Under the pieces are notes generated by a model, which saw nothing but the letters and a program-made list of their open reading frames with translations, searched no databases and had not been told where the DNA came from. From Adineta vaga (Eukaryota > Animalia > Rotifera), in NCBI GenBank assembly GCA_021613535.1, contig CP075494.1:14694001-14758000 (forward strand): a DNA stretch of 64,000 nucleotides, in the 5' to 3' direction. The translations under genes were made by a program, and so were the position numbers. Of the stretch, positions 5,867-25,300 are shown one piece after another. The stretch's first letter is position 1; each line of letters begins with the position of its first letter.

Positions 5867-6289
5867 TCAGACGTCGAGAGGAGATATTCCAGTCGAATAT
5901 TCATACCCACCAGTAATAGTAGCACCACCACCGCCGCCACCAATAGTACTATTTCGTGAAACGTAAAGTGATGTAAAATTATAATGTCCATGTTTAGAAT
6001 TATGACGGCGTGAAACAATTGTTGAAATATAAACAAGAATCCAAACTGTAACAATTAATGAGATCAAACCAATATAAGGCCATAGAGCAAATGAAAGTGT
6101 AAAAGAACTAGAAGTATTAATCTGTAAAGACGATGTGTCATTAGAAGTTAGGACAAAAAAATCCTATAGATAAAAGACAAAAAAAATCGAATTTAAAATA
6201 TGATGAGAAATTCAATTGCTTACTGTTGGTAGGTAGATACGATTAGTGTCTGTAGTTACAATAACAAAGGTCATTTCTTTTCCATCCAT
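5867..6289 (-). CDS. Small single-pass membrane protein, about 120 aa (exons 6289-6224, 6163-5867)
   Basis: ATG at 6289 and a phase-0 60-nt GT-AG intron. TM segment ALWPYIGLISLIVTVWILVYI, basic stop-transfer RR, C-terminus SPLDV. Confidence 0.6.
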
Positions 6290-6673: not shown

Positions 6674-7923
6674 TTAATTTGAATTAATTTTATTTCGAAT
6701 CCAGCTGAGATATGTACTTGTTCGCGTATATACTCCTGGATAGTTGGACAGAGCACAATCAGCTCCGAAACTTACAACACCCGACAAATGCCATTGACCA
6801 TTACTATTGAACATCAATGGACCACCACTATCACCTTGACAACTATCTTTTCCTCCAACATAGGGCATACTAGCACCAATTTGTCGTTGAACATCGAAGT
6901 ATGCTGGATAGGCGGCTTTTGCTTGAGCATTTGTTACTTTCACAGTCACTTGTCGAAGAGCATTTGGTAATGCACTACCTTTATATGTTGATCCCCAACC
7001 AGCTACTGTCACCGACATTGATTCTTGTGGATCAGGTCCTGGTAAACAAATCAAACTAACATACGTATTTAGTTGAACTGGCTGTGCTAAACGAAGAATA
7101 GCAATATCATGAGCTTGAGTAACAGAATTATATTGCTCATGCATAAAAATACGTGAGACACCAATGTTTTGTGTACGTCCATTATTTTTATTTGATCGTT
7201 CATGTAAACCAGCAATGACACGAAGTTGACTACTGCTAGCTGATGTTAAACAATGAGCAGCTGTAAGTACGTGACGTGTATCAATCAAGGTTCCACCACA
7301 GAAATGATCGCGTACTTGCAATGAAACAATCCATGGCCATGAATTGGGTGTTGCTTCGATTCCACCAACAATACGTTGAGTGGTTGGAGTGATAGATTGA
7401 CGACCACACGTACTACTTGATCCGATTGATGGTGTTGTTGTCGGTACTGTTGCACTCGTTGTTTGTCCAATACTTGTCTTCAAACAACAGTAACGAACTT
7501 TATAATCTGTACATAGTTTCTGTTTATATCCTGCAACTTGTTGATTCAAACATAAAAATCCATCTTTGACAGTCAAACGAAACAGATCACCAGTTCCAAC
7601 TGGATTTTCTCCTTTCACAGTTTGAACCTAATTCATTTTCACATTTATTAATGAATTAATGAGAGATCGATCTCTATTATAATTACCTCAATAGCAACTG
7701 GTGCAGGACACATGAACGATGGAAAGTTTTGTTGAAGATGATTTGTGACTTCGAATTCACCATGTGAACTGCTTGGATCACCGGAATCAAACCAAGTTGT
7801 CCACTGATTATTTCCTGAACAAGTAGATTCTGTATAACTTGATGGATCAAAGATGCCTTGTGACGATACACCAATGTTCATTTGTAACAATAGTAATAAT
7901 ATACCAATAATACGCATATTCAT
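6674..7923 (-). CDS. Secreted trypsin-like serine protease with N-terminal mucin WxxW domain, copy 1 (intron 7628-7686)
   Basis: Signal peptide, WTTWFD...CTDYKVRYCC (WxxW domain), Thr/Ser linker, R|IVGG activation site, triad TAAHC/HDIAI/GDSGGP, S1 Asp in KDSC. Confidence 0.93.
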
Positions 7924-8527
7924 GGTTATCGAAGTATCTATTCAAGAAGATATAATCACTGACACTTTTTTTCTCACCAAAATAAGAAAAAGAAAAAACA
8001 TTAATGATATATGTAGTGACTGAAATTGGATCTATAATCGAAGAAGAAATATTTATTCACTCTAATCGATCAAAAATATTATGAAAATTGATCCAAGGAC
8101 AATCATTGTATTTTAAAAGTACGTCTTTAATATGATTGATATAAAATGAATGAAGTCATTACCTTATATGTCGATGTAATACGATGAAAAATAGAAATGA
8201 GAAGATAATTTTATGTGATAATAGCATACAAGTAACGCTCATCCGTAGGATTCGCTGACCCCTCTCTGAAAGAACTATAATGATAATTAACGCATCGATA
8301 TTCTTTAAAAAAAACTCTCTTAAAGAGAAGAAACACTCGTCAAAATTTCTTTTCTTGATTTTATGTTCTGATTTTGTTCAGCATCATTGAAAACCTCGAG
8401 ATCCACATTTTAGCGCATCTGGTTGAACGAATAAAAAAATACATCAATTCTACTGACAACCACTCCCAAAACTATTTTGAGATTTCTCAAAAAATATAGC
8501 TAAAAAGAACGCTCATAAAATTTGCAG

Positions 8528-8628
8528 CTTCCGACGGAAATTCTACTGACGGAATCCGATAGGATTTTGTCGGAACGTTGGATCCTATAAGGTCCTATCG
8601 GATCCAGTATCGGATTTGTCGACCTGGG
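8528..8628. mobile_element. Probable MITE end fragment with ATCCGATAGG/CCTATCGGAT sub-repeats
   Basis: GC-richer patch with internal inverted copies (atccgatagga / tcctatcggat) ending in cgacctggg. No partner end found. Confidence 0.4.
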
Positions 8629-8806
8629 AGGAGCTTTATGAAATTATTCGTTTAATATACTAAAAGATACAGCATCGAAAACTGAACAAAATCCTCTATT
8701 TAGATATTCCCTTTCTGTGGACCGATCGATACTAGTCGAACATTAAAAATACGTAAATTTGATAAATATATAATGATATTAATTGTTTCTATCTATTCTT
8801 TGAAAG

Positions 8807-10814
8807 AAAAAAAGGAGTTTTATAAAACCTTTTTGGGTTCTGCAACATCTCCAGAACCAGAAAAAGTTCTGTTTTATTTATTTTGAACCAAAAGGGTTCT
8901 GCCCAAAAATACCCAGTTTGAAAGGGTTCGGTCTTATAATATGGAATCATAGAGATTTTTTTCTTCGACGTTACTAAATGTAAAGTTTCTTCTCTAAAAT
9001 GCGCAACCTGACATAGCTGCCTCAGTGAATGTTGGAGTATCGTAAGTTTCCTCAACTGAAGAAGAGAGTCACACACTCAAAAAATGTATATACGTTCGTT
9101 TGTTCATGCAAGTCAACAACAATTTAACAACTTTCTTTTCTCTTTTGAGTTTTGTCATAACAAAAAACGGAAATGCTTTCGCCATTTCAAGTTGTCAATA
9201 ACGATCTTAGGTATGAACTGAACAACTTAATGTTTTGCATCGACGATGGTGGGAGTCCACTATCAGTATACGATTATTCCAAGCAATTGTTCAGTCATCC
9301 AAATCTAAGGGAGGTTTTTCTCTTATTACTTACATGTAACAAAATCATGTTCAGGCCAGTTACAAGTTAACAGAGAACGACTCTAATATAGCTCAAACTA
9401 ACTTATATGTTATGTCCACAATAGAGGGTAGGAGTTGATCAGCTCAAGTCCATGAACTCTGATGAAATGAACTAAAGAACTATGCAAAAGTTTATCATTT
9501 CACCGAGCTCAATCTTTTAAAAATATTCTTTAAAAATAAAATGATCTTTTTCAGCGGTTTCTCTATTCGATTATGTAAATATCACGCAGTCATCAACTGA
9601 TAGTATGTAGGGGTATTTGTATACCCTTGAGCATAGAAGATATCTTTAAATAATGAGACTAGCAGACAGGGACGGCCCGAGGATTTTATAATACCCGAAA
9701 ATTTAACTTCAAAGCATGGGTCCCGCATGAAACCTATGAAAGATGATAAGTGACCCAAATGGTGACTTTTTACCAAAAACATTTTGTGATTGAAGTTTGT
9801 GAAAAAAAATTCTTTTAACTGCTACACCCAACTTTTGTTTTTGGTTTAAGCAGTACTCAGATTCTTAGAATGTTATCGGAATCTACATCGAATTTCATCC
9901 ACAGATTTCAAGTCTTTCAGAAGCTATCAAGAGATATATTCAATACGACTTGTTCAATCCCTCTTTCTATTCGGACAGCTTTCGAAACTAAATATCATAT
10001 GAAATATTTCTTATTGTTGTATAGGTACATATCGATCTCTGATTAAGAGTAAGTAATATTTCAAATACGAAATGAAACATTCTCTATTATCATTTAGGTT
10101 TGTATAGATATGTGGGTAAAAATGAGTTATTTTCAAACAATATGTTAAATATTTATTGTTATCATTTCGGTTCATAGCCATATCTGATTAAAGTTGAGTG
10201 ATATTTTGAATTTTAGATTAAATATTTTCTATTGTCATTTAGGTTCAGGTCTAAGTCTAACGAAATGTGAGTTATATTTTATATAGAAAACTAAATATTT
10301 TCTTCTTTTATATTTAGACCGATCTATATTGCAGAGAAATGGTAAGTGGGATATTAGAAACAAAATAAGTAGAATGATTTTCTTTTTATATCTATAGGTT
10401 GATTTGTACACGTATTCAAGTACTGCAAGTGCGTCTGTTTATATTACAAGGTCAAAAACAGACTGAGAAAGTGAATTAGGTTAGGGCTGAATTGAGCCAA
10501 TCGGCAGCAAGCAAAAAGCATGATTCGACTCTAGCTTAATTCACTTTTTCGGTCTATTTGAGAGCTTAACATGAACAGACGCACTTGCAACACTGGAATA
10601 TGTGTACAAATCAACCTAGATATAAAGAGAAAATAATTTTCTGAAAAACCATTTAACACACCTTTTATGTCAGACTGAACCTTATTTTTGTATAGAATAA
10701 TGAAGAGTCCTGTTAGATTTTAACAGAACCCTCTATGAGCCAGAACCTTTTTGTGGGTTCTGAATTTTACCAGCGGGCCGAACCCCCAAAAAGATTCTGG
10801 AAAACTCCTTTTTT
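8807..10814. mobile_element. Non-autonomous TIR element (~2 kb) with nested insertions
   Basis: Left end aaaaaaaggagttttataaaacctttttgggttc is the imperfect reverse complement of right end gaacccccaaaaagattctggaaaactcctttttt. Both ends carry (A)GAACC/GGTTC sub-repeats. Confidence 0.6.
10379..10633. mobile_element. Fold-back MITE-like element (long imperfect palindrome)
   Basis: taggttgatttgtacac...gcaagtgcgtctgtt...aaagtgaatta is mirrored by taattcacttt...aacagacgcacttgc...gtgtacaaatcaaccta. Arms are about 110 bp. Confidence 0.75.
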
Positions 10815-13466
10815 ATTTTCGGATTTGAATTTATAAGATGCATATGTCAAATTAATCAACATCATGTCATATAAATTTGGTTGCGTAGGACCATATTGAC
10901 GTAATAAATTTACTGATAAATAACGAAATTATGGAACACACGATAATAAACAAATCAATTGATTACAATATATTGAATTATCAACGAGTATAAATATTCC
11001 ATTGAGCTATATGAGAAAGTCGTAATGTATTGTGTATATTTCGGAAAGTATAGAAGCAATTGATCTCAAATTGTGTCGAAGGAAAATAATATGAAAGTGT
11101 TCCACAACAGATTTTTAATCTTGAGAGAATCTGAAATAAAACATAGTTTCTCGTAATATTAACGTAAGATGCGATCAAATGAGAATTAAATAGGTTTCGA
11201 AAAAAACAGTCGAGTATTCCAGAAGGTCTTCTATTGTAAAACTAGATTTACATAAATGAATAGACAACATTATTCTATAGAAGAATAAAATAATAGGGAT
11301 CTATCGAAAGACGATAATGAGAAGGGTATATCACATGATGCTTTAAAGAAATATTACCTTAGAAGACAATGATCAAAAAAGATTAGAACACTTATGATAA
11401 TTAAATGAAAATAGAGTTGCTCTAATAAATTACTGCTTGTCTATAAATAAGAAACAAAATGAGTAGAAATATAGATGAGATTTACGGAATATTCATTTTG
11501 AATTTTGTTCTCATTTCGTAAGTCTAAATATGGAAGTTTTTTTATCTCTTTTGCCATGAAAGTAGAAAAGAAAAACTTCTTCTACGCAAGACATCAACAT
11601 TATTATTTGTTTTCATTAGAATTTAAAACATTGAAAAAAGAACGAACAATCATATACTCTATAATTTTGGTCAAAATGTATATGTTTTCTGATAGAAGAG
11701 AAAGCTTTTATCTGGCAACATCAAGTATTAAAAAATGAAGAAAAAGAGTTTATTGAATTTTTTGTATGGATTCAATAGTTATTTACCTAATTATGACAAC
11801 GGATAATATCCGTTTACAATCGATTATTTTAAAATTTACAAGCTCGTCTTTGAATGACGTTTGATAATGTCTTCATTTTTATCTTGGTTATGATGCAACA
11901 CTCGTTTGAATTCTCATTGTTTGGATGCTGTGAAATTGTGCAAAGGTTACACGTAACTATTATATGAATTCGATATTTTTTACAAATATATTTAGAGCAT
12001 TGCAATCAAAATTGATTAAATCAAACCAAACAAAGTTTATCATTAATTTTGTTATCTCTTTTCGATTAATGTTAGATATTATTTGTTAATTCACGTCAGA
12101 TATAATCCTATCTTTGTTAAAATACCAATATTATATGAAAGAAAATTTCCATTCAGTGTAAATATGACAATTATATACTTCATCAATATATTCATAGTCT
12201 AAAAGTCAGTGATCAATATGCCATTGGTTCAATGAAACAAATGTCATGATACATGCGTCGGTGGTATATTTTAGAACAATGTTCATCACAATCGATGAAT
12301 TCAGAAAGGCAGTTCACATTGATTTCTCAAAAAAACAAAATCGTCAAATTAGATAAAGAAACTATTTTGGATGTACATTCAACAACTAAATGTTCATTAC
12401 CATGTGTAATTATTTGAATGCACAGCATGAAAAGCTTCGATAGATCTAGTATAGTCGGTTTCATCGACACCGATGATGAATATATTCAAAAAGAAATATG
12501 TGTAAACTTAAGACAGAACGACTTTACCACTCGCGAATTAATCAAACTCTTGTAATTCTGAGAATGATAATGAATAGGAAAGGGAATATAAGTACGGGTC
12601 ACTATGTAAACATGAAACACTCTTTGTGTTTACAAATGCATTTCGCCGTCTTTCATTGAAGTTCGAATATATCGGAAGTTGGATCCAGATGCGATTTATA
12701 TCCTAAATTGTGTCTCTACACATTTGTTAGTTGAGACTGAGATACACTCTTTTCTCTAAAACTTTCTTTTTTTATCTTGAAAGATGTACGAATACAAAAT
12801 ATCTTTCTATCATTAGACATCAAACGTCAAATAAAAGATGCAACTAAATAAAGTTGTCAAACTCGTCATCCACTTTATCTTGACGTCAACCCCAACTCTC
12901 TAACGTTACAAATATAGTAACGATTTGTGAGACACTCAGACTTTAAACTAAACTCTCTATTATGAGAAATATTCAAAATAAAGTTCGAAAGAATATTTTG
13001 CTACGTTTTCATGCACAACAGAATGTTTAATAAATGATTTTCCAGTCGTTCCCAATAGATCAGCGATGAGAATAAGTCCAGCGGACTCATTAAAAGGCTC
13101 ATAAGACGCATCGACGGTCGTCCTTCTTCTTCATAACATTTCCACTATTGAAAATTTTTCAGAAGACATTATATTAAGAGTAGACAGTTTCACAAAATAT
13201 CGTATGATACCCATCAAACTTCACCTAATAAATTATAGTGCATTTCAAACACGGGATTTCGCTATTTCGGACATACACAAATCATCAACTTAGATGACGA
13301 ACACATCTCACACGGTCGGGAATCGAGAGCTTGAAACAAAACACGTTATTGTACGATAAATACGACTTTTCCAAGCACACTGTGTATTCATTTCTCACCA
13401 TATCGGTTTCCTCTGAAAAAATTCTCCAGAAAAGAGCACTAAAAAACAATGTCCCTCAAGTCCAAA

Positions 13467-15775
13467 CTACAACGTCGACCTATTTCCAAAAGCATTTCGG
13501 AGATACTTTCTTTCTTTGTCGCCGATTTCATTGCCCGGGAGATCTAGTGTCGTGAGTGTCTATAGAGGAGAGAGAGCATGGATGTGTCAATTAGGACAAG
13601 AGCAAATGAGTATTACTGTGTTTATTCGCAAGGCATCACAAATATCTTGTGCTCCTTGATGACCGATTTGATTGAATCGGAGATTTAGTGTGGTGAGTGT
13701 CTATAGAGGAGAGAGAGCATGGATGTGTCAATTAGGACAAGAGCGAATGAGTATTACTGTGTTTATTCGCAAGGCATCACCAATATGTTGTGCTCCTTGA
13801 TCGCCGATTTGATTGTTCCCGAGATCTAGCGTGGTGAGTGTCTATAGAGGAGAGAGAGCATGGATGTGTCAATTAGGACAAGAGCAAATGAGTGTTACTG
13901 TGTTTATTCGCAATGCATCACCAATATGTTGTGCTCCTTGATCGCCGATTTGATTGTACCAGAGATTAAGCGTGGTGAGTGTCTATAGAGGAGAGAGAGC
14001 ATGGATGTGTCAATTAGGACAAGAGCAAATGAGTGTTACTGTGTTTATTCGCAATGCATCACCAATATGTTGTGCTCCTTGATCGCCGATTTGATTGTCC
14101 CCGAGATTAAGCGTGGTGAGTGTCTATATAGGAGAGAGAGTATTGATGTGTCAATTAGGACAAGAGCAAATGAGTATTACCGTGTTTATTCGCAATGCAT
14201 CACCAATGTCTTGTGCTCCTTGATCGCTGATTTCATTGTTCTCGAGATTAAGCGTGGTGAGTGTCTATAGAGGAGAGAGAGCATGGATGTGTCAATCAGG
14301 AGAAGAGCGAATGAGTATTACTGTGTTTATTCGCAAGGCATCACAAATATGTTGTGCTCCTTGATCGCCGATTTGATTGTACCCGAGATTTAGTGTGGTG
14401 AGTGTCTATAGACGAGAGAGAGCATGGATGTGTCAATTCGGACAAGAGCGAATGAATATTACTGTGTTTATTCGCAAGGCATCACAAATATCTTGTGCTC
14501 CTTGATGACCGATTTGATTGAATCGGAGATTTAGTGCGGTGAGTGCCTATAGAGGAGAGAGAGCATGGATGTGTCAATTAGGACAAGAGCAAATGAGTGT
14601 TACTGTGTTTATTCGCAATGCATCACCAATATGTTGTGCTCCTTGATCGCCGATTTGATTGTACCAGAGATTAAGCGTGGTGAGTGTCTATAGACGAGAG
14701 AGAGCATGGAAGTGTCAATTCGGACAAGAGCGAATGAGTGTTACTGTGTTTATTCGCAATGCATCACCAATATGTTGTGCTCCTTGAGCGCCGATTTTAT
14801 TGTACCCGAGATCTAGCGTGGTGAGTGTCTATAGAGGAGAGAGAGCATGGATGTGTCAATCAGGAGAAGAGCGAATGTGTATTACTGTGTTTATTCGCAA
14901 GGCATCACAAATATGTTGTGCTCCTTGATCGCCGATTTGATTGTACCCGAGATCTAGCGTGGTGAGTGTCTATATAGAGAATATTTCTTTCGAGAATGTG
15001 GGTAAAGCAATCGGAACTTTAGAGTAATGTTTTTCAATTAGATATAGCATTATACAAGAGGTGTTGCGGTAGTGTGTGAAAGTGTTCGATCTGGGTTCAT
15101 GGAGTGAAAAGAGAAATCGTTGCTTGTCTGATGATTACTGAGGTAATGTGCGAATTGTCGGATGAGTAGAGTGAGTACTGTACTGAAGGTAGTGATACTT
15201 TTTTATTTCGAATTGGGTTGGATTGTTATTTTTAGATTTGGTTTGCGGAAGATCGTATTGAGTCGGGGCAGAATGTAAAAAAATTCATTCGATTTTATTC
15301 GGTGGGTTCATAGATAGCTGTTGCATTGTTTAAGTGTTGCATGGAGACATTTGTTTGAAACGGGAAAGGTGTTTTTATGCGGCGGTTTTATTCTTGTGTG
15401 GCGCATGAGTGCGCGCTGAATAAGATATATATTATATGTGCATAGATAGAAAAGAACAGGTGAGAGGAAGTGTGGTTTTAATAGCATGAGTCAATACTGT
15501 GTTTGGTTGACTCGTGGAAATTGCTTCGGAATTGTGAAATTTGTTTTTTCTTTAAGTGAACTGATTAAGTTAGATATTGCGAGGCTCATATGTGCTTGAA
15601 CGGATGAGAAAATAGGTAAAGCACTTTGCAAACTTACTTGATATGGATGATAAATATTCAGAATTTGATTAAAACGTTGGCAAACATTTTGCATTGAGCA
15701 AAATAGTGTAAAAGCAGACAGATGATCCAAAATTCGATAGACGAGTTCAATCGGTAATGTTGAAAATGTGTACAT
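13467..15775 (-). CDS. F-box plus RI-like LRR protein, about 356 aa (F-box exon 15775-15638; ten 84-nt LRR exons between 14969 and 13617; terminal exon 13559-13467)
   Basis: F-box MYTFSTLPIELVYRILDHL...VCQRFNQIL ends at a phase-0 GT. Each repeat exon reads like TLTTLDLGYNQIGDQGAQHICDALRINT between AG and GT. No stops occur until TAG at 13467. Confidence 0.88.
13524..14975 (-). repeat. Tandem repeat, 141-bp unit, about 10.3 copies (84-nt exon + 57-nt intron)
   Basis: Anchor ctata(g/t) recurs at 13560, 13701, 13842, 13983, 14124, 14265, 14406, 14547, 14688, 14829 and 14970, an exact 141-bp period with no indels. Confidence 0.98.
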
Positions 15776-16244
15776 ATTCGCTTTAAATTCCACAGAAGTT
15801 TGTTGAGAATACAAGCTATTGAAATAAATTTTGTTTGTTATGAAAAGAAATTCGCTTTCCTGATAGTATTGTATTTCTGTTATTCGAAAAAAATAATGAA
15901 ATTTGACGATTTCAACAAAAGCGAATAGCTCGTTTATGCAGAAAGATGGCGTTAACGTATGTACTGAGTGTAGTTTTGTCTAACGTGTGTGATTATCAGT
16001 GTCAGTATACACTCAAGATACGTATTTTTCATTAGTAATTTTTTGAGTTTTACAAAAGAGTTTGTTTTAAGAAAGGATATTTTTGCATGTGATATTCAAC
16101 AAAAGTTCAATCAGAAAAGGAAATCTTTGCGTGTAGATACCGATAGTCTCTACTTTTCACGCTCACGCTCCATACCCTCATAAACCATAATTTCATTCTC
16201 TTAGTTCGACGTAAGGCAATTTTTATTTCAAACACGTCTATCCT

Positions 16245-16380
16245 TAAAGATCTTAACAAGAAAATTATTTGAATTAAAGAAAACAAAGCCGGTTCATCTT
16301 ATCGTGATGTGCGAGATAAATGTTTTGTATGAACAACTGGTGGTGTATCAAATATTCTCAAAAGATAAAGAAAACACATG
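16245..16380 (+). pseudogene. Degenerate pogo/Tigger-like transposase N-terminal HTH fragment
   Basis: Translates as IKENKAGSSYRDVRDKCFV*TTGGVSNILKR*, resembling a CENP-B/psq-type HTH, with stops. Confidence 0.5.
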
Positions 16381-16769
16381 AAAATATGAACTAAGTTCGA
16401 GTCTGACTGTCACCGAGTTAACTGAGACTGTTTCATATCTATGCCACCGTATCTCTAAGACGTTCTTATAAGATTTGCTTATTCCACTACGTTTTTCGTT
16501 GATTCCAATAGTGTTCAAACTAGACAAATTTTACTGTACTTTATTTTTCTCAAACCTGCTACGGGTTCGATTCTACCTATGTGTTCATTTATTGAATTAT
16601 CATCTCTAGAATGATCAATAGTTTCTATTTCAATATTACTAAACTTTTAATGATTGTATGAATAAATAACGACCGACTGATTGTAATCTCATATTATATC
16701 TATCGAAATCGCGTACTTAGCTCGTACTGAAGGGTAGCGCAATATTTTGATCTTGCGCAGCCTTTAACT

Positions 16770-18548
16770 TTTAACCCTTGATCCTATCCTTACTCTATTC
16801 TCGGTTTCCGATGTTTAAGACAGTCTTGAAGAAAATGGTTTTTTGACCTTTGACACTGACACAAAGCGCACAGAAACTTTTTTCCCATATGACGCTCCTT
16901 TCTGTAGAAGGAATAAGGCGTGGGTGTAAGTGTTCCTTGATAGAGTACGCACATACATACATCCACACAAGGGGAAAAGGCGGATCCTGTATCCTCATAG
17001 TTTCTGCGATCACACAGTTCATGATGACCAATGATAACCCATGAGGGTCCGAAAGTTTTATAGGATTTGGGTATCCAGGATCCGCTTTTCCCCCCTTGCA
17101 GACCCACACCCTCAACTTCTACTGAAAAAACATTTCTTCAATTAACCCAGTAGCTTCATTAAAGAATTCACAGTCAGAATTTTTTCTTTCATGCTTAATA
17201 ACAGGTTATTTTCAGTTTCGCAATAATTATAATAATTGTTTAGAATTATGAAAAGCTAACATCAGATTTGAAATCCTCGACTTCGATTACTTTTGGGTAA
17301 ATCATTTACAGATGATTATTAGTAAATTTTCATGAATTTTTATATTGTTGCCATCTGACTGGATTAGACAAATAACAAATAACAATTAATTAATTACGGT
17401 TCATAGAAAAATATTTTTGGGAAAGGAACCCAAGATTCGTATTCCTCGATCTCGATTACATACGACGAATCGTTGTCCGATGACTAGGGGTAAGTTTTCA
17501 TCGATTTATACGCTGCTTTCACCTGATTGGCTTGGACAAACGCACAAACTTTAAGCATTTTAACGACCCTATTTAAAAAGCATATAACCCATTTTTTCAG
17601 AAAAGTGAAAAAAATTCTATCAAATGATCTGATGTATAATGGTCGACCACGAAAAGATGTTTAACCCTTTCCAGCCGGATGTATCCATATGGATATATTT
17701 TGCCGTAGGGGGTGCGGCATTTTCCAAATAGCCGGTCGGAAAGGATTGAAAAAGCTGACATAAGTATCGTACCTATTCTGTCAATTACTTGAAGTGCAGT
17801 TTTTTCTATCAATTCCTTACCAAATCCTATACTTAGAAGTCGTAAATGATTCAAATGGCGCAGGCAGTCCACGAACAGAAGTCCATTGATTAGTTTCTAG
17901 CACCATTTTGAAGGGAGATATACACTGAGATATTTGTCGTGGAGAGAGCTGTAAATGACAATGGTGGAATCGATCACATAGAACTAGCATCATATTCAAA
18001 TTCGTTAGTATCGATAATTTTTTATAGAATTTGACCAAACACTCATGAAACATTGAGTTTTCTGGGAGGAAAAGATCAAAATAGGTCTCAGATATATAAT
18101 TCATCGAAAGCTAAATTGGATTCGAGATCCTCGATCCTGATTACCGTTCGGTCGACCCTTACATTGTAGTATAATAACTTATAATTAGTTAATTAGCTAA
18201 TTAGTTAATTCATCAATCAGAATTTCGGAAAACTAACGTCAGATTCGAGATCCTCGACCTCGAAAACCGTTCGGTCAATCCTTACTCCAAAATCATTGGA
18301 TACTCATTAGTTAATTATCTAATTAGGTAGTCAATAAGTTAGAATTTTGAAAAACTAATATCAGATTCGCGTTCCTTGACCTCGATTACCTATGATTAAT
18401 TATTGTCTGATGACTCGAGGTATGTTTTCATTGATTTATAAGCAGCTTTCACCTTATTGGCTTGGACAAACTCACAAACGCACAAACTTTAAACATTTTA
18501 ACGACCCTATGTAACGTGCCTATAACCCTTTCTTTCAGAAAAGGGAAT
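16770..18548. mobile_element. Composite non-autonomous repeat(s), possibly Helitron/Helentron-derived
   Basis: 22-bp inverted repeat at 16968-16989/17076-17098. Five copies of a (t)tcgagatcctcgacctcga-like motif. A ~135-bp direct repeat (17474-17608 and 18404-18548) ends in the hairpin ccctttct-ttc-agaaaaggg. Confidence 0.5.
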
Positions 18549-18766
18549 AATCCTTTTTTACTATATTCTTAAAAGCTATATATAATTAGTAGATAAAAAC
18601 GAATTGTCGATTGATACGAATAAATGCGATAATTTCGGTTCCACGACATTATCGCGCAATTTTTTTGGCTAGTTTACGGTTCATCAATAAGCTTTTTACT
18701 ACTATTAATCAGAGAATAGTGTTCCTTTTTTTACTAGTCAGTTCATTCAGATGAAACAGGATATCA

Positions 18767-19173
18767 TACGGCTTGCCCAAGTGTAACGCTGCGTGACAGT
18801 TTTTTTGTTGAACGTTTTTTAGGCACTTAGCATAGTTCCTTCGATATTCTTGAACATTCTGTCTGAGAAGGGATTGATGCGCTCTTCTAGAAGTCTGTAT
18901 TCTGAGCAGTAAGTTTGAAAGTCTACATAGGAGACCAAAATTTGCCTTTGTCTAGAAAGCTGAAAGCCAAATAACTCATCTTGTAGCGAGTGAAATTCTC
19001 TATAGAATCATATGTTCCACGACATATTTTGAAGAAATTTTCTGCGTATGATGTCCAAATGCGGTTTTTGAGAAGCCTAAATCGGGTTTGTTACATGAAA
19101 AGCTGATTTTTTCATTAAATGATTGGCAGAGTCATAATCAGCGACGTGTCGCGTTACGTCGACAAGCCCCGTA
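18767..19173. mobile_element. Tc1/mariner-like MITE (~400 bp)
   Basis: TA-flanked imperfect TIRs: tacggcttgcccaagtgtaacgc and gcgttacgtcgacaagccccgta. Confidence 0.5.
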
Positions 19174-19379
19174 AGGAATAATTGGATTAGGTAATAATAA
19201 GTACATAACTATAATTGAATCATCAATAAGAAGAAAGTCAAGGAAACGATCAACTTCTTCTTGATGGCTTTCGGTATCGCCGAGATAGGACAGTATAACG
19301 TTGTGTACAGGACAAGTGTAAAGGTCGTGTTCATTTCGATGGAATTACATTTAAAATTTACCAAGATCATGTACGTCAG

Positions 19380-20060
19380 GCGCCACATCCACACGAAATT
19401 AGAACGAAAGCCTCAGAATGTCATGATTCACCAAAATTAATAATACACAAAGCGCGACTTAAATTATCTTCAGGTGCTGCTATTACTAGTCCTTAACACA
19501 ATGTATCACTACATGTTATTCCATTAACTTTTCAAATGACTATTACCAACCAAAAATTTATTTTATACGATAGTAATGATGATAATCGTCGACTCTTGAT
19601 ATATGCTATCAAAGAACAATTAGATTTTTTAAATTAATCTGAGAGTTGGCATTGCGATGGTACATTTGCTCTAATTATATGAAATATATTTGAAATTGAC
19701 AAACAACATGTTACACGTAAACCAAAGTACATTTCAATCGATTTTGAAAAAGTAGCTAAAGATGCGTTTAGTATTATATCCTGATTGTGAAATATTTGGC
19801 CGTTTCATCGATTTTAAACAGTGTATCTGGAGACATATTTGTGTAAGTTTATTTCATTCATAATGAGTTATATGAATTTTCCTTACAGTTGATGAATGTT
19901 TTGATTTTTTGGCTGGAACTATACTTGAAAAAAGAATTTCTTGAAAATGATGTTAGTCGCTGCACAATGAAAATTCAGCTGATCTTGCATTCATTCCACC
20001 ACAAAATGTTATTAAAGAATTTGTGCGAATAAAAGAAAATGCATCAGATAGTAAATAAAA
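19380..20060 (+). pseudogene. Mutator (MULE) transposase remnant
   Basis: Broken frames give RRLLIYAIKEQLDFLN*SESWHCDGTF (19647-19667 for WHCDGTF), KPKYISIDFEK, FKQCIWRHI and LAFIPPQNVIKEF, typical MULE DDE motifs. Confidence 0.8.
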
Positions 20061-21059: not shown

Positions 21060-22303
21060 TTAATTTGAATTAATTTTATTTCGAATCCAGCTGAGATATG
21101 TACTTGTTCGCGTATATACTCCTGGATAGTTGGACAGAGCACAATCAGCTCCGAAACTTACAACACCCGACAAATGCCATTGACCATTACTATTGAACAT
21201 CAATGGACCACCACTATCACCTTGACAACTATCTTTTCCTCCAACATAAGGCATACTAGCACCAATTTGTCGTTGAACATCGAAGTATGCTGGATAGGCA
21301 GCTTTTGCTTGAGCATTTGTTACTTTCACAGTGACTTGTCGGAGAGCATTCGGTAATGCACTACCTTTATATGTTGATCCCCAACCAGCTGCTGTCACCG
21401 ACATTGATTCTTGTGGATCAGGTCCTGGTAAACAAATCAAACTAACATACGTATTTAGTTGAACTGGTTGTGCTAAGCGAAGAATAGCAATATCATGAGC
21501 TTGAGTAACAGAATTGTATTGTTCATGCATGAAAATACGTGAGACACCAATGTTTTGTGTACGTCCATTATTTTTATTTGATCGTTCATGTAAACCAGCA
21601 ATGACACGAAGTTGACTACTGCTAGCTGATGTTAAACAATGAGCAGCTGTAAGCACGTGACGTGTATCAATCAAGGTTCCACCACAGAAATGATCGCGTA
21701 CTTGCAATGAAACAATCCATGGCCATGAATTGGGTGTTGCTTCGATTCCACCAACAATACGTTGAGTGGTTGGAGTGATAGATTGACGACCACACGTACT
21801 ACTTGATCCCATTGATGATGTTGTTGTCGGTACTGTTGCACTCGTTGTTTGTCCAATACTTGTCTTCAAACAACAGTAACGAACTTTATAATCTGTACAT
21901 AGTTTCTGTTTATATCCTTCAACTTGTTGATTCAAACATAAAAATCCATCTTTGACAGTCAAACGAAATAGATCACCAGTTCCAACTGGATTTTCTCCTT
22001 TCACAGTTTGAACCTAATTCATTTTCACATTTATTAATGAATTAATGAAAGATCGATCTCTATTATAATTACCTCAATAGCAGCTGGTGCAGGACACATA
22101 AATAATGGAAAGTTTTGTTGAAGATGATTTGTGACTTCGAATTCACCATGTGAACTGCTTGGATCACCGGAATCAAACCAAGTTGTCCACTGATTATTTC
22201 CTGAACAAGTAGATTCTGTATAACTTGATGGATCAAAGATGCCTTGTGACGATCCACCAATGCTCAAATGTAATAATACGAATAGTGTTGCAATGATCTG
22301 CAT
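21060..22303 (-). CDS. Secreted trypsin-like serine protease with WxxW domain, copy 2 (intron 22014-22072)
   Basis: Near-identical to copy 1 across the mature protein and intron, with an intact triad and a different signal peptide. Confidence 0.93.
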
Positions 22304-25300
22304 AGTTATAAAGATGGAACTATATGTTTGTCAAAGAAGTCAATCGTTGACACTTTTTTCTTTGTTATCAAAATCAGAAAAAACGAATGATATATGTAGC
22401 CATTGAAATTGGATATGATTGAAGAAGAAATATTGATGTATTTTTCTTTATGGATCAAAAATATTATGAAAATTGATCCAAGGACAATCATTGTTTGAAA
22501 AGTGCATCGTTGAAACGAATAATATAACTTACGTATGTATGTAGCATGGTGATAAGAGCATTATAACTATTAATATTGCTTAAAACAATTGATGTATGCA
22601 ATAATAAAATTGAATTTTATGATCGATTTCAAATCGGAAAGAAAGAAAAGATATCTCTCAAGAAAGAATTATGCAATAATATTTATTCTTGATAAATATA
22701 TCCTTAAATAGGAAGAAAAATATAAAGTACGAATAATACGAGTAAATTCGATAATCTCAATGGTGCTCAGTAAACTGTAGAAGTTATTTTGTGCAATGAA
22801 ATTTTAGGTATATTCAGTAAAGTATACTGAGAACCATAATTAAGAAGAAATAAACTAGAATCTTAGAAATATGTCTTTAATTCAGGAAAGAAGGCACAAA
22901 TATGCTGATATTGATATCATCTTCTTTTGTTCATATCTCTTGAGAATGTGGCTGTGATAAGTTAAGAAAGGCCAAATGAAATACGCAGGTCACTCTATAT
23001 GACTTTCATCCGATGTTATATGAACTGAAAGGTCATTAGATACTATTGATTGTGTACGAAAACTAAGTTTCTCAAACAGTGTTCAGTTGATCACTCATAC
23101 CAGCAACACTAACACCACCTAAAATAACATCTGTCTTAGTTACAGTTTTGCTTTTCACAAATTTGAGCAAAATGTTTAATGTATTTAATTGGAACTTCGT
23201 TTCTTGAAAGTATGTTTGTGAAGCTTGTGTTGTTTTAAGATTGAAGACGCAGATTACGGCCGCTGGACTTCTTAGTATTCTGCAGGAAACGACCGGAGAT
23301 TTTATTGAACAAATAAAAAATATTATGAAAACTAATCCAAGAGCAATCAATGTGTTTGAAAAGTATTAACAAATTATGAATAGTACATTTTGCAAAACAT
23401 CAATATCGATGTAGGATGATTAATGATATTAAATTAGAACGATTTGCAAAATCAACAGAAAATGTTGGCTGGTAGAGTATACAGCAGTATTCACGTATTG
23501 TTATGTCTGTTCCATCATCATCATTATCATTCCGAACAGAGTAAAAACAGATACAATGACAATTAAGGTTTACAGAGTTTCTATGTAATATATGACTCTC
23601 ATGACTAAGTCAGAATCGTGATCAATTTATCTTATAGATTTCCTGAACCAATTAAAATAAAGCAAACAATCATTAGTTATTGACATTAAAATCAACAATC
23701 ACGATGACATTTTCTTTCTAACTATATAGATTTCACCTGAAAGAAGTCGAAGTCATTTTTTTGCTATCGAAATCTATCTGCTATAATTATCTTCAATATA
23801 GACGACTATATAAGATCATCAATGACCTTTGGGAAACGAATCGTTCTTATTTCCTAATGAACAACCTATATCTTTATATATGAAACACATTGCTATTTAT
23901 TATCTAGAAAACTAGAGATAATTATTTTCAACGATGCAAATCGAGACATTAATGAGAGAGAAAAATTTTTGGTATTCAGACAATAACAAAGAAGAATTTC
24001 GATTCAAAGTCAGAATAAATTAAAAGACAAATTCATCTTTAGTTATCAATAAAGACATGTGTGATAATCTAAGTATTATGAAGAAAATCATGTCCAAATG
24101 TCGTCTGTCATCTATCCTTTGTCTTGTTTCTACCTCAAGGTTTCGCTACTGTTAACATAGTTATGTCTCTGGAAATCTTCATCATTATGAAAAAATAACT
24201 TGATCAAACAAGACAGAAACTACTAATATATCGATATATTTATCTCAAAAGGGATTTTCTTGTTTTATTATTATTAATATCTATTCTCTTGTCGCACAAA
24301 TGTACAGTTTGTCTCATATAAATATGTATTAGACGAAGAGACAGAAGGAAGAGAAAAAAAGAAAAGCAAATCGACATATACAGAGGTGAACAAATATCTA
24401 TTCGTGTCATTATTCATCTTATAGTGATCTATTTTACACGTATATATATTTCAAATTCAATTGGTAAGTGTTTTTAATCAAACTGTTGCATATTTGAAAT
24501 TTTTAAGTTAATCATTATTAGTGTACAAATAAGAAGAAATTTAACGCTGAACATATATTTTCGAGCGAGTAGATCGCTATTCGAATGATGATGACTATCA
24601 ACGAACATGACTATTTTCTATTTGAAAACAAATCGGAAGAAAAAGGTGTGAATTTTTGCTTGTTCTTTTATCGTAATAGAAAAACAAGCTGAGAATACGC
24701 AAGTCAACAATCAAATAGGAATGTGCGAGAATAAGACAATGAATTGAGTTGAGATGATATATAGATGAAATCAGATTAATATGTAAATGAGTATGTGAAC
24801 TTTTGTCTAATGTTATTCTTTCCTTGGAACTGAAGTTTTCTTTTCTATGTCGTAATGATGATCAAATGATTCTTTTCTTTTTCCTTTCCTTTTTTCCTAT
24901 TCATATTGTTAGAGAAATCGAATTTGTTTATTTTCATTTCAAGCACGTCTCTATTGGATTCAATGTTTTGAAGGTAAGTTAGTTCATGTATATTTTTATA
25001 TGTGATATCTACTCTAAATGATGTAGATATATCATTAAGTTATTCTTCGTTATGATAGATGTGTATGTCAAAAGAACAAACTTGAACAAAGATACACAAG
25101 AAAAAGGTGTTAACATTTTGTTGATTGTTCATGTATAAATTTCGGAAAAGATAAAAGAGTAAAATGCCGTGATAATCAAATAGAATTTGACGTAATCTTT
25201 CTAATATTATTCGTCTTTGTGTCTTTTTTTTGATGACGAATCTCAATGAAACAAAAGAGAAAATGACCGATCGATTCGATTAGTATGCAGTGCTAACCTT

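What the first reader, a model, noticed from the sequence alone, without database searches (positions are those of the whole stretch)
13467..15775. F-box gene with an exon-per-repeat LRR cassette array and variable ligand-facing residues: candidate diversifying recognition system
Seen: ten 84-nt phase-0 exons each encode one 28-aa RI-like LRR and are separated by near-identical 57-nt introns, with no indels or stops. In transcription order the LxLxxNx core reads LDLGYNQ, LDLGYNK, LNLWYNQ, LNLRFNQ, LNLGYNQ, LNLENNE, LNLGDNQ, LNLWYNQ, LDLGNNQ, LNLRFNQ and, in the terminal exon, LDLPGNE. Codons 8-9 take chemically very different states (G/W/R/E/P and Y/F/N/D/G) while scaffold codons and even introns are nearly invariant. 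Known: these x positions lie on or next to the concave binding face of LRR solenoids, and F-box-LRR proteins are SCF substrate adaptors. Exon-per-repeat LRR diversification is reported in other lineages (Ectocarpus ROCO, Tetrahymena LRR genes). Inference: this is a modular, fast-evolving adaptor that could route foreign (pathogen or transposon) proteins to ubiquitination.
Basis: partly seen in the sequence, partly recalled or inferred. Interest (0 to 1): 0.9.

Follow-up and report, generated by a model that had tools for sequence, protein, structure and literature searches.

The report
Hypervariable F-box/LRR cassette gene family
This is a real, spliced rotifer gene that joins a ubiquitin-ligase "F-box" handle to ten one-exon leucine-rich repeats whose predicted binding residues change about four to five times faster than neutral DNA. 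It is one of at least 40 copies, most of them sitting in a 9.4-kb block that has been copied around the chromosome ends.

Summary
A minus-strand gene (CDS 15775..13467, 12 exons, 356 codons) has a 46-codon F-box exon. A 668-nt intron joins it directly to ten 84-nt phase-0 exons with 57-nt GT-AG introns, followed by a 30-codon terminal exon. RNA-derived contigs show both kinds of junction, but only at family level.

The gene is not unique. At least 40 F-box exons and at least 278 exon-intron units of this type lie in the genome, which is probably Adineta vaga. An Adineta steineri homologue has the same architecture.

Over 207-244 units, LRR codons 8, 9 and 11 (and 6 and 14 less strongly) are hypervariable. 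Their first two bases have diversity 0.52, against 0.11 in the linked introns, 0.10 at scaffold third positions and 0.06 at scaffold replacement positions. The third base of these codons is kept (NNG, NNC, NNA), which points to selection on the amino acid rather than a mutational hotspot.

The gene sits in a ~9.4-kb dispersed block (window 8228-17612) with razor-sharp ends and unrelated flanks. That is the mark of a transposon-like carrier.

The SCF-adaptor and defence functions remain inference.

The scan noted this family three more times elsewhere in this genome.

The parts
15638..15775 (-). Exon 1: the start codon plus a 46-codon F-box. It ends ...HPYQ, followed by a GTAAGT donor, in phase 0.
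   Evidence: Pfam F-box PF00646 E=2.7e-5, 24.3 bits against a cut-off of 20.5. The exon is intact in all 21 loci examined. pN/pS is 0.29 over 20 paralogues. A contig lies exactly on 15657-15781.
14970..15637 (-). Intron 1 (668 nt, GT..AG).
   Evidence: Contig joint 14969->15638 skipping 668 nt, with CT..AC on the + strand, run X2, 49 letters on the shorter side. The same intron is 662-670 nt long in 18 of the 20 other loci examined.
13560..14969 (-). Array of ten 141-bp cassettes, each an 84-nt phase-0 exon (one 28-aa RI-type LRR) plus a 57-nt intron. Exons: 14886-14969, 14745-14828, 14604-14687, 14463-14546, 14322-14405, 14181-14264, 14040-14123, 13899-13982, 13758-13841, 13617-13700.
   Evidence: LRR_6 hits on single exons. 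Joint 14828->14886 skipping 57 nt, and exon-exon loose ends. Units 3 and 8 are identical. Units 7 and 8 differ only at the first bases of codons 8 and 9.
13467..13559 (-). Terminal exon: a degenerate last LRR / C-terminal cap (30 codons) plus a TAG stop.
   Evidence: Homologous terminal exons (...RKYLRNTFGNRL...) are present in 16 of the 21 loci.
15018..15213 (-). Possible alternative upstream exon inside intron 1, joined to the first LRR exon by a 48-nt intron. It would give an isoform without the F-box.
   Evidence: Joint 14969->15018 skipping 48 nt (CT..AC), run X2. The contig lies on 15018-15213 with 6 other letters, so it comes from a paralogue. The frame stays open from an ATG near 15050. 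Not followed further.
8228..17612 (-). A ~9.4-kb dispersed repeat block that carries the gene: 1.8 kb upstream, the gene itself, and 5.2 kb of AT-rich sequence downstream with no ORF above 95 codons.
   Evidence: The block is 88-98% identical to the paralogous loci over its whole length, except the older copy L038 (74-89%). The 5' edge is sharp, with unrelated flanks in 16 copies, and starts with a hairpin motif. The 3' edge at 8228 is shared by at least 20 copies. The flank ORFs have no significant Pfam hit.
17610..18551 (-). Adjacent ~940-bp repeat of another family. It starts with the same ~190-bp terminal sequence as the 9.4-kb block and lies head-to-tail with it.

Best explanation
The stretch is one functional member of a young, lineage-specific gene family in a bdelloid rotifer, probably Adineta vaga. 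The proteins are minimal: a 46-aa F-box, then n x 28-aa ribonuclease-inhibitor-type LRRs (n = 2-24, here 10), then a short cap.

Shown:
- Each LRR is its own symmetrical phase-0 84-nt exon with a ~57-nt intron. Whole cassettes can therefore be duplicated, deleted or exchanged without breaking the reading frame. Arrays do differ in number and order even between copies whose flanks are 97-99% identical.
- The scaffold residues and the F-box are under purifying selection.
- The first two bases of codons 8, 9 and 11 (and 6 and 14) turn over 4-5 times faster than linked introns or synonymous sites, while the third base is kept. In a model of a homologue these codons lie at the end of the beta-strand and in the strand-to-helix loop.
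- The gene is transcribed and spliced as predicted, at family level.
- The gene travels inside a ~9.4-kb block with sharp ends. That block sits at 26 or more places, mostly in the outer fifth of the chromosomes.

Inferred:
- The protein is an SCF (Skp1-Cul1) substrate receptor. Its LRR surface is being selected for new binding specificities.
- The most likely setting is a conflict with pathogens, transposons or other fast-changing targets, which it would mark for ubiquitination.
- The family grew by trans-mobilisation of the block, for which intron-retaining, Penelope-type mobilisation of host genes is a published precedent in this species. It then diversified through unequal exchange and point substitution.
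For: Anatomy.

Domains: F-box above the Pfam cut-off and LRR_6 on single exons. The LRRs of a homologue match ribonuclease inhibitor 1DFJ at 1.5e-30 and also NLRP chains.

Splicing: joints of 57 nt and 668 nt at GT..AG. The genome holds 0 exon-exon junctions against 278 exon-intron junctions.

Intactness: 0 stops in 244 internal exons. Exon length is always 84 nt, while introns vary from 55 to 61 nt.

Selection:
- Amino-acid entropy is 2.2-2.9 bits at codons 8, 9 and 11, against under 1 bit at 23 of the 28 codons.
- Diversity is 0.52 at the hypervariable first two bases, 0.105 in introns, 0.104 at scaffold third positions and 0.061 at scaffold first two positions.
- In this gene alone, pN at the hypervariable codons is 0.27 against intron 0.068 and scaffold pN 0.031.
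- Unit pairs that differ at 0 or 1 of 116 reference sites still differ at 8% or 26% of the hypervariable sites.
- Parsimony steps per site are 29 against 5.7 in introns.
- Rank-sum test p=6e-5.
- The codon pattern is NNG / NNC / NNA with the third base kept.
- F-box pN/pS is 0.29.
- The A. steineri gene shows the same architecture and the same ranking of site classes.

Structure: AlphaFold2 model of the A. steineri homologue, pLDDT 87. The strand covers LRR positions 4-6 and the helix starts at position 13.

Block.

Location: 22 of 26 copies lie in the outer 20% of their contig, p=4e-6.

Precedent: PMC3846280.
Against: - No experiment or prediction here shows Skp1 binding. No eukaryotic Skp1 could be used in the complex tool.
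- There are no data on substrates, induction or phenotype.
- RNA support is at family level. Most contigs carry 3-10% other letters, and the one exact contig (15657-15781) is also identical in the paralogue L031.
- The runs are only guessed to be RNA, although the joints argue for it.
- pN/pS computed inside the three hypervariable codons alone is only 1.1-1.7, because their few synonymous sites are noisy and partly saturated. The excess is measured against introns and scaffold synonymous sites.
- Gene conversion that homogenises scaffolds and introns could inflate the contrast, although selection would still be needed to spare the variable codons.
- The class of the 9.4-kb block is unresolved: no terminal inverted repeats, no hammerhead ribozyme, no target-site duplication found, and no transposase or reverse transcriptase inside it.
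Confidence: 0.6

Rival explanations
1. The gene is cargo that serves the mobile block itself. It would be a transposon-borne SCF adaptor that sends host silencing or defence factors to degradation, as some viral F-box proteins do. The variable residues would then reflect an arms race with host proteins, not host defence.
For: The gene is the only recognisable coding unit in a ~9.4-kb block with sharp ends and unrelated flanks at 26 or more sites. The termini are shared with shorter repeat families. The copy number is far above what PMC3846280 describes for its Penelope families in this species.
Against: The same F-box + 84-nt-exon architecture exists in A. steineri at 61% F-box identity. No copy of the block's terminal motif lies in the 13.6 kb read around that gene, so the gene family is older than the block. 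LRR_6 arrays in bdelloids are also fused to RING/B-box, ADP-ribosyltransferase and kinase/U-box heads, which looks like a host receptor repertoire. The block holds no transposition enzyme.
Confidence: 0.12
2. It is an ordinary birth-and-death F-box family that acts on the animal's own proteins (regulation, reproduction, genomic conflict between lineages). The variable residues would reflect sub- and neo-functionalisation, with no role against pathogens or transposons.
For: Expanded, positively selected F-box families in Caenorhabditis have been tied to hybrid incompatibility and selective degradation of an endogenous enzyme as well as to immunity (PMC11573670, PMC12951971, PMC8120010). There are no induction data here.
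Against: Change is concentrated at a few surface positions. 80 different states of the three hypervariable sites occur among 244 units, and near-identical units still differ there. That is the pattern of open-ended recognition families such as plant NLRs, lamprey VLRs and Ectocarpus ROCO (PMC3341825). This is a resemblance, not proof.
Confidence: 0.18
3. The variable codons are a local mutational or micro-conversion hotspot with no selection for diversity.
For: Third positions of the hypervariable codons are somewhat raised in nearly identical unit pairs (0.06-0.12 against intron 0.01-0.02). Identical non-adjacent units and mosaic units show that sequence is exchanged between cassettes.
Against: The codons vary as NNG, NNC and NNA. 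The first two bases have diversity 0.36-0.70. The four-fold site of Gly codon 8 has 0.18, within the range of other four-fold sites, and codon 11 position 3 has 0.07. The invariant Asn codon 10 sits between the variable codons. A hotspot would not skip third bases and one whole codon.
Confidence: 0.05
4. It is a decaying pseudogene or satellite-like repeat that only looks coding.
For: It is a tandem repeat in a repeat-rich, distal chromosome region. 5 of the 21 arrays examined lack a recognisable terminal exon.
Against: There are no stops in 244 exons. Exon length is fixed while intron length varies. Scaffold pN is half the intron divergence, F-box pN/pS is 0.29, and spliced RNA contigs exist.
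Confidence: 0.02

Closest known systems
Ectocarpus ROCO / LRR genes with one LRR per exon and exon shuffling (Zambounis et al. 2012, PMC3341825; PMC11378527)
   Same: One LRR per exon of fixed length that is a multiple of three. Cassette number varies between paralogues. Positively selected residues lie on the concave face. Both were proposed as variable recognition receptors.
   Different: There the exon is 72 nt (a 24-aa plant-type LRR) and the head is a ROC-COR GTPase. Here the exon is 84 nt (a 28-aa RI-type LRR), the head is an F-box, the introns are tiny (57 nt) and duplicated together with the exon, and the whole gene rides in a 9.4-kb dispersed block.
[quoted passage not shown] 2019, PMC6564038)
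   Same: Tandem exon-intron cassettes of exact length. 1-51 cassettes per gene. Exons are scrambled between paralogues by ectopic recombination. The young genes are enriched in subtelomeric and pericentromeric DNA and are associated with a retrotransposon. Intron-retaining co-mobilisation was proposed.
   Different: In the ciliate the introns are phase 2, so exons interlock. No F-box head is described in the passages I read, and there are thousands of genes. Here the introns are phase 0, the animal has an F-box head, and there are tens of genes.
Expanded, positively selected F-box families of Caenorhabditis and plants (Thomas 2006, Genome Research, cited from memory; PMC8120010, PMC8665587, PMC3030570)
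   Same: A lineage-specific burst of F-box adaptors. The F-box is conserved while the substrate-binding part is under positive selection. The location is in chromosome arms or distal regions. The hypothesis is that they target foreign proteins.
   Different: To my knowledge (not checked here), the nematode families mostly use FTH/FBA2 or other domains, not RI-type LRR arrays, and are not built from one-repeat exon cassettes.
Penelope pLTR-mediated mobilisation of intron-containing host genes in A. vaga (Arkhipova et al. 2013, PMC3846280)
   Same: Same species (probably). Multigene-family members, including an LRR gene, are copied to new sites with their introns kept, framed by terminal repeats. 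One such repeat starts with a palindrome.
   Different: I found no hammerhead ribozyme, no matching terminal repeat at the 3' end and no target-site duplication. The link is a lead, not a finding.
Ribonuclease inhibitor and NLR-type LRR domains (PDB 1DFJ, 1A4Y, 1Z7X; NLRP chains)
   Same: A 28-aa LxxLxLxxNxIGDxGAxxLxxaLxxN repeat. These are the best solved-structure matches of a homologue's LRR region. From memory, RI contacts its ligands mainly through strand ends and strand-to-helix loops, which is where the variable codons lie.
   Different: The RI gene has two repeats (57 aa) per exon (from memory) and no F-box. NLRs carry NACHT heads.

Membership tests
F-box proteins (SCF substrate receptors) | An N-terminal F-box motif of ~40-50 aa recognised by the family profile | tested here: met
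   PF00646 scores 24.3 bits against a cut-off of 20.5, E=2.7e-5. PF12937 scores 21.6 bits, below its cut-off of 24.3. 513 library proteins match the 46-aa exon at E<=0.001.
F-box proteins (SCF substrate receptors) | The F-box is conserved by purifying selection while the C-terminal domain varies | tested here: met
   F-box pN/pS is 0.29 over 20 paralogues. The F-box exon is ~96% identical between copies, against ~89% for intron 1.
F-box proteins (SCF substrate receptors) | Binds Skp1 and assembles with Cul1 | not testable with these tools
FBXL subfamily (Skp2-like F-box/LRR proteins) | Cysteine-containing LRRs of about 26 residues after the F-box (feature recalled from memory) | tested here: not met
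   The repeats are exactly 28 aa with the RI-type consensus ...NxIGDxGAQHIxDALRxNT. The best solved matches are ribonuclease inhibitor and NLRP LRRs. It works like an FBXL protein but is not a canonical member.
RI-type (ribonuclease-inhibitor-like) LRR domain | A 28-29-aa repeat, LxxLxLxxN plus helix, with profile and structure matches | tested here: met
   LRR_6 PF13516 scores up to 30 bits on single 28-aa exons. A homologue matches 1DFJ at 1.5e-30. The model shows a regular strand/helix solenoid with pLDDT above 93 in the LRR part.
Exon-per-repeat, cassette-shuffled LRR receptor families (Ectocarpus ROCO, Tetrahymena LRR) | One repeat per exon of fixed length with symmetrical intron phase | tested here: met
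   All 244 internal exons are 84 nt and phase 0-0. The same holds in A. steineri.
Exon-per-repeat, cassette-shuffled LRR receptor families (Ectocarpus ROCO, Tetrahymena LRR) | Cassette number and order vary between close paralogues | tested here: met
   There are 2-24 exons per gene. The closest paralogue has flanks 97-99% identical but 12 exons against 11, and the arrays are not collinear.
Exon-per-repeat, cassette-shuffled LRR receptor families (Ectocarpus ROCO, Tetrahymena LRR) | Excess replacement change at surface positions of the repeat | tested here: met
   The positions were mapped on the model of a homologue. Likelihood site models were not run.
Penelope pLTR-framed mobilised host genes | Framing pseudo-LTRs, a hammerhead ribozyme in the pLTR (recalled from memory), and a target-site duplication | tested here: inconclusive
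   The ends are sharp and the 5' end has a hairpin. A related ~190-bp direct repeat lies just upstream. No Rfam ribozyme was found at E<=1. No repeat of the 5' end is present at the 3' end. No target-site duplication is visible in the one copy with both flanks.
Somatically assembled LRR receptors (lamprey VLR type) | Somatic rearrangement of cassettes into an incomplete germline gene | not tested
   The germline genes here are complete and intact. No somatic or single-cell DNA data were examined.

The most novel reading that the evidence does not exclude
Bdelloid rotifers carry a germline-encoded, cassette-shuffled repertoire of intracellular recognition proteins. It comprises tens of F-box/RI-LRR genes holding hundreds of one-exon repeats with about 130 different binding-site states. 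New genes are seeded around chromosome ends by a transposon-like 9.4-kb carrier and diversified by unequal exchange plus selection. The repertoire would act as an SCF-based immune or genome-defence system that tags pathogen or transposon proteins for destruction. For an ancient asexual animal, this would be a way to keep generating receptor diversity without sex.
Probability: 0.25. Interest if true: 0.85.

Novelty: new variant of a known kind. Interest (0 to 1): 0.66.

Why it matters
Bdelloid rotifers are the textbook ancient asexuals, and how they keep up with parasites and transposons is an open question. This family gives a concrete, testable candidate.

- The effector handle (the F-box) is conserved.
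- The binding surface is written in interchangeable one-exon cassettes.
- A handful of surface positions evolve 4-5 times faster than neutral DNA.
- A mobile carrier multiplies the gene.

It is also a third, independent and animal example of exon-per-repeat LRR diversification, after brown algae and ciliates. It is the first I could find that is coupled to a ubiquitin-ligase adaptor.

In practice, the 141-bp cassette and the 9.4-kb block are easy markers. They can be used to compare isolates and haplotypes, and to look at published infection, desiccation and irradiation transcriptomes.

Tried and rejected
- Rfam on 7500-19500 at gathering scores, and on 16900-18700 and 7900-9300 at E<=1. It found no ribozyme, tRNA or other RNA family, only a chance miRNA-like hit at E=0.13.
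- Terminal inverted repeats of the block: none. The 5' terminal motif recurs only in direct orientation, at 18547.
- Helitron-type ends (TC...CTRR) on either strand: not present on reading the ends.
- Target-site duplication: none visible in the window copy.
- Pfam on ten flank ORFs: nothing significant.
- Contigs for the library proteins P0002 and P0001. One gave a 1.9-kb metagenome contig without the array, the other gave nothing.
- The sigma-70 promoter/terminator scan is irrelevant for a eukaryote and was empty.
- The held library has no paper on a bdelloid F-box/LRR family.
- Left out by rule: the joined (spliced) 356-aa protein was never sent to any search or folding tool. Exons were searched one at a time by reference, and a database homologue (P0134) was folded instead.
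- Skp1 docking was not run, because no admissible Skp1 sequence was available.
Full report
**1. What is in the sequence**

Tandem Repeats Finder reports a 141-bp period, 10.3 copies, 91% matches and no indels at 13519-14974. Translating the minus strand shows one frame in which each 141-bp unit reads as 28 codons. These are followed by 57 bases that begin GT, end AG and contain in-frame stops.

Walking the array gives ten 84-nt exons, with minus-strand starts at 14969, 14828, 14687, 14546, 14405, 14264, 14123, 13982, 13841 and 13700. Each is followed by a 57-nt intron. A terminal exon then runs from 13559 to the TAG at 13469-13467.

Upstream, an ATG at 15775 opens 46 codons (MYTFSTLPIELVYRILDHL...HPYQ) that end at 15638 before GTAAGT. 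Pfam places this exon in F-box (PF00646, 24.3 bits, cut-off 20.5). Single 28-aa exons fall in LRR_6 (PF13516, up to 30 bits). The coding sequence is therefore 15775..13467 on the minus strand, with 12 exons and 356 codons.

Exons were searched one at a time by reference.

**2. Is it spliced and expressed?**

I laid contigs of four public runs on 14740-17700. The runs were labelled "RNA?" by the tool. The contigs show three kinds of evidence:
- A joint 14828->14886 that skips exactly the 57-nt intron.
- A joint 14969->15638 that skips 668 nt with GT..AG ends, joining an F-box exon directly to a first LRR exon.
- Loose ends in which one LRR exon abuts the next without an intron.

The genome holds no exon-exon junction of this kind: 0 hits with up to 2 mismatches. 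The matching exon-intron junction occurs 278 times. The joined forms therefore come from RNA, not from processed DNA copies.

There are limits. Most contigs carry 3-10% other letters and so come from paralogues. The one exact contig (15657-15781) is also identical in the closest paralogue. Expression is therefore shown for the family, not for this locus alone.

A further joint (14969->15018, 48 nt) hints at an alternative upstream exon inside intron 1 and an isoform without the F-box.

**3. It is a family, and an old one**

A two-unit query finds 309 or more matches at 87-95% identity on five of the six contigs. The F-box exon region finds 40 scored copies: 26 at 93% or more and 14 at 84-90%.

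I examined 21 loci, the window plus 20 fetched. All have:
- an intact 46-codon F-box exon with a GT donor;
- an intron 1 of 662-670 nt (two exceptions);
- 2 to 24 LRR exons of exactly 84 nt.

There is no stop in 244 internal exons, while introns vary from 55 to 61 nt. Fixed exon length with variable intron length is what a constrained reading frame predicts.

The genome is 100.8 Mb in 6 contigs with about 31% G+C. The nearest database proteins are from Adineta and Rotaria. I take it to be Adineta vaga, which is an inference.

An Adineta steineri homologue (P0134, F-box 61% identical) has the same plan. It has a 47-codon F-box exon, a 753-nt intron, seven 84-nt exons with 58-nt introns, and a terminal exon that its annotators missed. 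The architecture therefore predates the recent burst.

In bdelloids, similar LRR_6 arrays are also fused to RING/B-box, ADP-ribosyltransferase and kinase/U-box heads.

**4. The variable positions**

Across 244 units the amino-acid entropy is 2.5, 2.9 and 2.2 bits at codons 8, 9 and 11. It is 1.4 and 1.3 bits at codons 6 and 14, and below 1 bit elsewhere.

For the 207 units with 57-nt introns, nucleotide diversity by site class is:

| Site class | Diversity |
|---|---|
| First two bases of codons 8, 9, 11 | 0.52 |
| Introns | 0.105 |
| Scaffold third positions | 0.104 |
| Scaffold first and second positions | 0.061 |

In the window gene alone, replacement divergence at the three codons is 0.27. 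This compares with 0.068 in its introns (4.1-fold higher) and 0.031 at scaffold codons (0.46-fold). Nine other arrays give 2- to 7-fold.

Several further tests agree:
- Unit pairs identical at all 116 reference sites still differ at 8% of the hypervariable sites. Pairs with one reference difference differ at 26%.
- On a tree built from all sites, which is conservative, parsimony gives 29 steps per hypervariable site. Introns give 5.7, scaffold third positions 5.8 and scaffold replacement positions 3.7.
- The rank-sum test of hypervariable sites against intron sites gives p=6e-5.
- Within this gene, units 3 and 8 are identical over 141 nt. Units 7 and 8 differ at two bases only, the first bases of codons 8 and 9.

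The codons vary as NNG, NNC and NNA. The Asn codon between them is invariant, and the four-fold site of Gly codon 8 is no more diverse than other four-fold sites. That pattern fits selection on the amino acid and argues against a local mutational hotspot.

The older A. steineri array shows the same ranking: 0.65 at hypervariable sites, 0.27 in introns, 0.24 at scaffold third positions and 0.14 at scaffold replacement positions.

There is a caveat. pN/pS computed only inside the three codons is 1.1-1.7, because they hold about two synonymous sites and are near saturation. I did not run likelihood site models.

The introns behave like neutral sequence of a young duplication.

**5. Where the variable residues sit**

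I folded the F-box plus seven LRRs of the A. steineri homologue with an 18-row alignment. The mean pLDDT is 87, and above 93 in the LRR part. In each repeat the strand covers positions 4-6 and the helix starts at position 13.

Position 6 therefore ends the strand. Positions 8, 9 and 11 lie in the strand-to-helix loop around the structural Asn10. Position 14 opens the helix.

The LRR region matches ribonuclease inhibitor (1DFJ, 1.5e-30) and NLRP chains best. From memory, ribonuclease inhibitor contacts its ligands mainly through strand ends and these loops. I did not verify this residue by residue.

**6. Turnover of arrays**

The closest paralogue (L031, 240 kb away on the same contig) compares with the window as follows:

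| Region | Identity |
|---|---|
| 5' flank | 97.6% |
| F-box exon | 100% |
| Intron 1 | 97.0% |
| 3' flank | 98.6% |

Its array nevertheless has 12 LRR exons against 11 here. The best unit-to-unit matches do not follow the diagonal. Arrays therefore reorganise faster than their flanks diverge. The F-box exon is under purifying selection (pN/pS 0.29).

**7. The gene rides in a dispersed 9.4-kb block**

Homology to the paralogues is not confined to the gene. It runs from window 17612 to 8228.

At the 5' edge, 16 copies start within a few bases of each other with T(T/A)N-TTCCCTTTTCTGAAAGAAAGGGTTATA, which forms an 8-bp hairpin. The sequence outside is unrelated in every copy. At the 3' edge, 20 or more copies stop at window 8226-8228.

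Both terminal pieces also occur in shorter repeats elsewhere. One of these (17610-18551) lies head-to-tail with the block.

The block holds no other recognisable gene. It has no terminal inverted repeat and no Rfam ribozyme. The only copy with both flanks at hand shows no visible target-site duplication.

Of the 26 young copies, 22 lie in the outer fifth of their contig (p=4e-6).

Arkhipova et al. 2013 (PMC3846280) describe intron-containing host genes in A. vaga, including an LRR gene, that were copied by Penelope machinery between terminal repeats. One of those repeats starts with a palindrome. This is the best available lead for the mechanism, but I could not confirm it.

In the window the block sits between two 98%-identical tandem trypsin-like protease genes.

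**8. Verdict**

The modular, fast-evolving F-box/LRR adaptor is well founded. The SCF function rests on domain membership and on conservation of the F-box. The idea that it targets foreign proteins is a reasonable but untested hypothesis.

The kind is known. Cassette-shuffled one-exon LRR families occur in Ectocarpus (PMC3341825) and Tetrahymena (PMC6564038). Positively selected F-box families occur in nematodes and plants. The combination, the animal host and the carrier are new as far as the held library shows.

The scan has noted the same family three more times on other pieces of this genome. I confirmed a note on mosaic and identical units in this same stretch.

Noticed in passing
window 6674-7923 and 21060-22004 (minus strand): Two tandem trypsin-like serine protease genes, 98.3% identical in DNA with 4 amino-acid differences over 314 residues. 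They flank the inserted repeats, and their upstream regions (7991-8120 and 22376-22503) still align at 83%.
   Followed up: partly
window 17610-18551: A ~940-bp repeat of another family, with copies on C2, C3, C4 and C5 at 76-90%. It begins with a perfect copy of the terminal hairpin motif of the 9.4-kb block and ends exactly where the block begins. Its class is unknown.
   Followed up: partly
window 15018-15213 and 14970-15017: RNA contigs (from paralogues) use a 48-nt intron to join an exon inside intron 1 to the first LRR exon. The frame is open from an ATG near 15050, so an LRR-only isoform without the F-box is possible.
   Followed up: no
window 15779-15782: RNA contigs end 4-6 bases upstream of the ATG, right after an AG. 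One ends at 15779 and runs into adapter sequence. This means either a very short 5' UTR or a trans-splice acceptor. No leader sequence was seen.
   Followed up: no
LRR codon 28, third base (for example window 14886): The last exon base toggles between G and A (131 against 110 of 243 units, 36 parsimony steps). It is the most changeable silent site. It forms a CpG within the ACG codon, just before the intron's GT.
   Followed up: no
window 8228-13466 compared with 14970-17612: The AT-rich 3' part of the block has no ORF over 95 codons, yet it is more conserved between copies (~95%) than the 5' flank (~92%) or intron 1 (~89%). The reason is unexplained.
   Followed up: no
L052:4001-9563 (Adineta steineri, protein P0134): The public gene model skips the true terminal LRR exon (near 5888 in the locus) and splices on into a PDZ-coding exon 3 kb downstream. 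This is probably an annotation fusion.
   Followed up: partly
proteins: In Adineta and Rotaria the same RI-type LRR_6 arrays are attached to F-box, RING/B-box, ADP-ribosyltransferase and kinase/U-box heads. This suggests a wider LRR receptor repertoire with interchangeable effector domains.
   Followed up: no
genome-wide: None of the 26 young copies lies on contig C3, the largest. C3 has only one older copy, at 87%.
   Followed up: no
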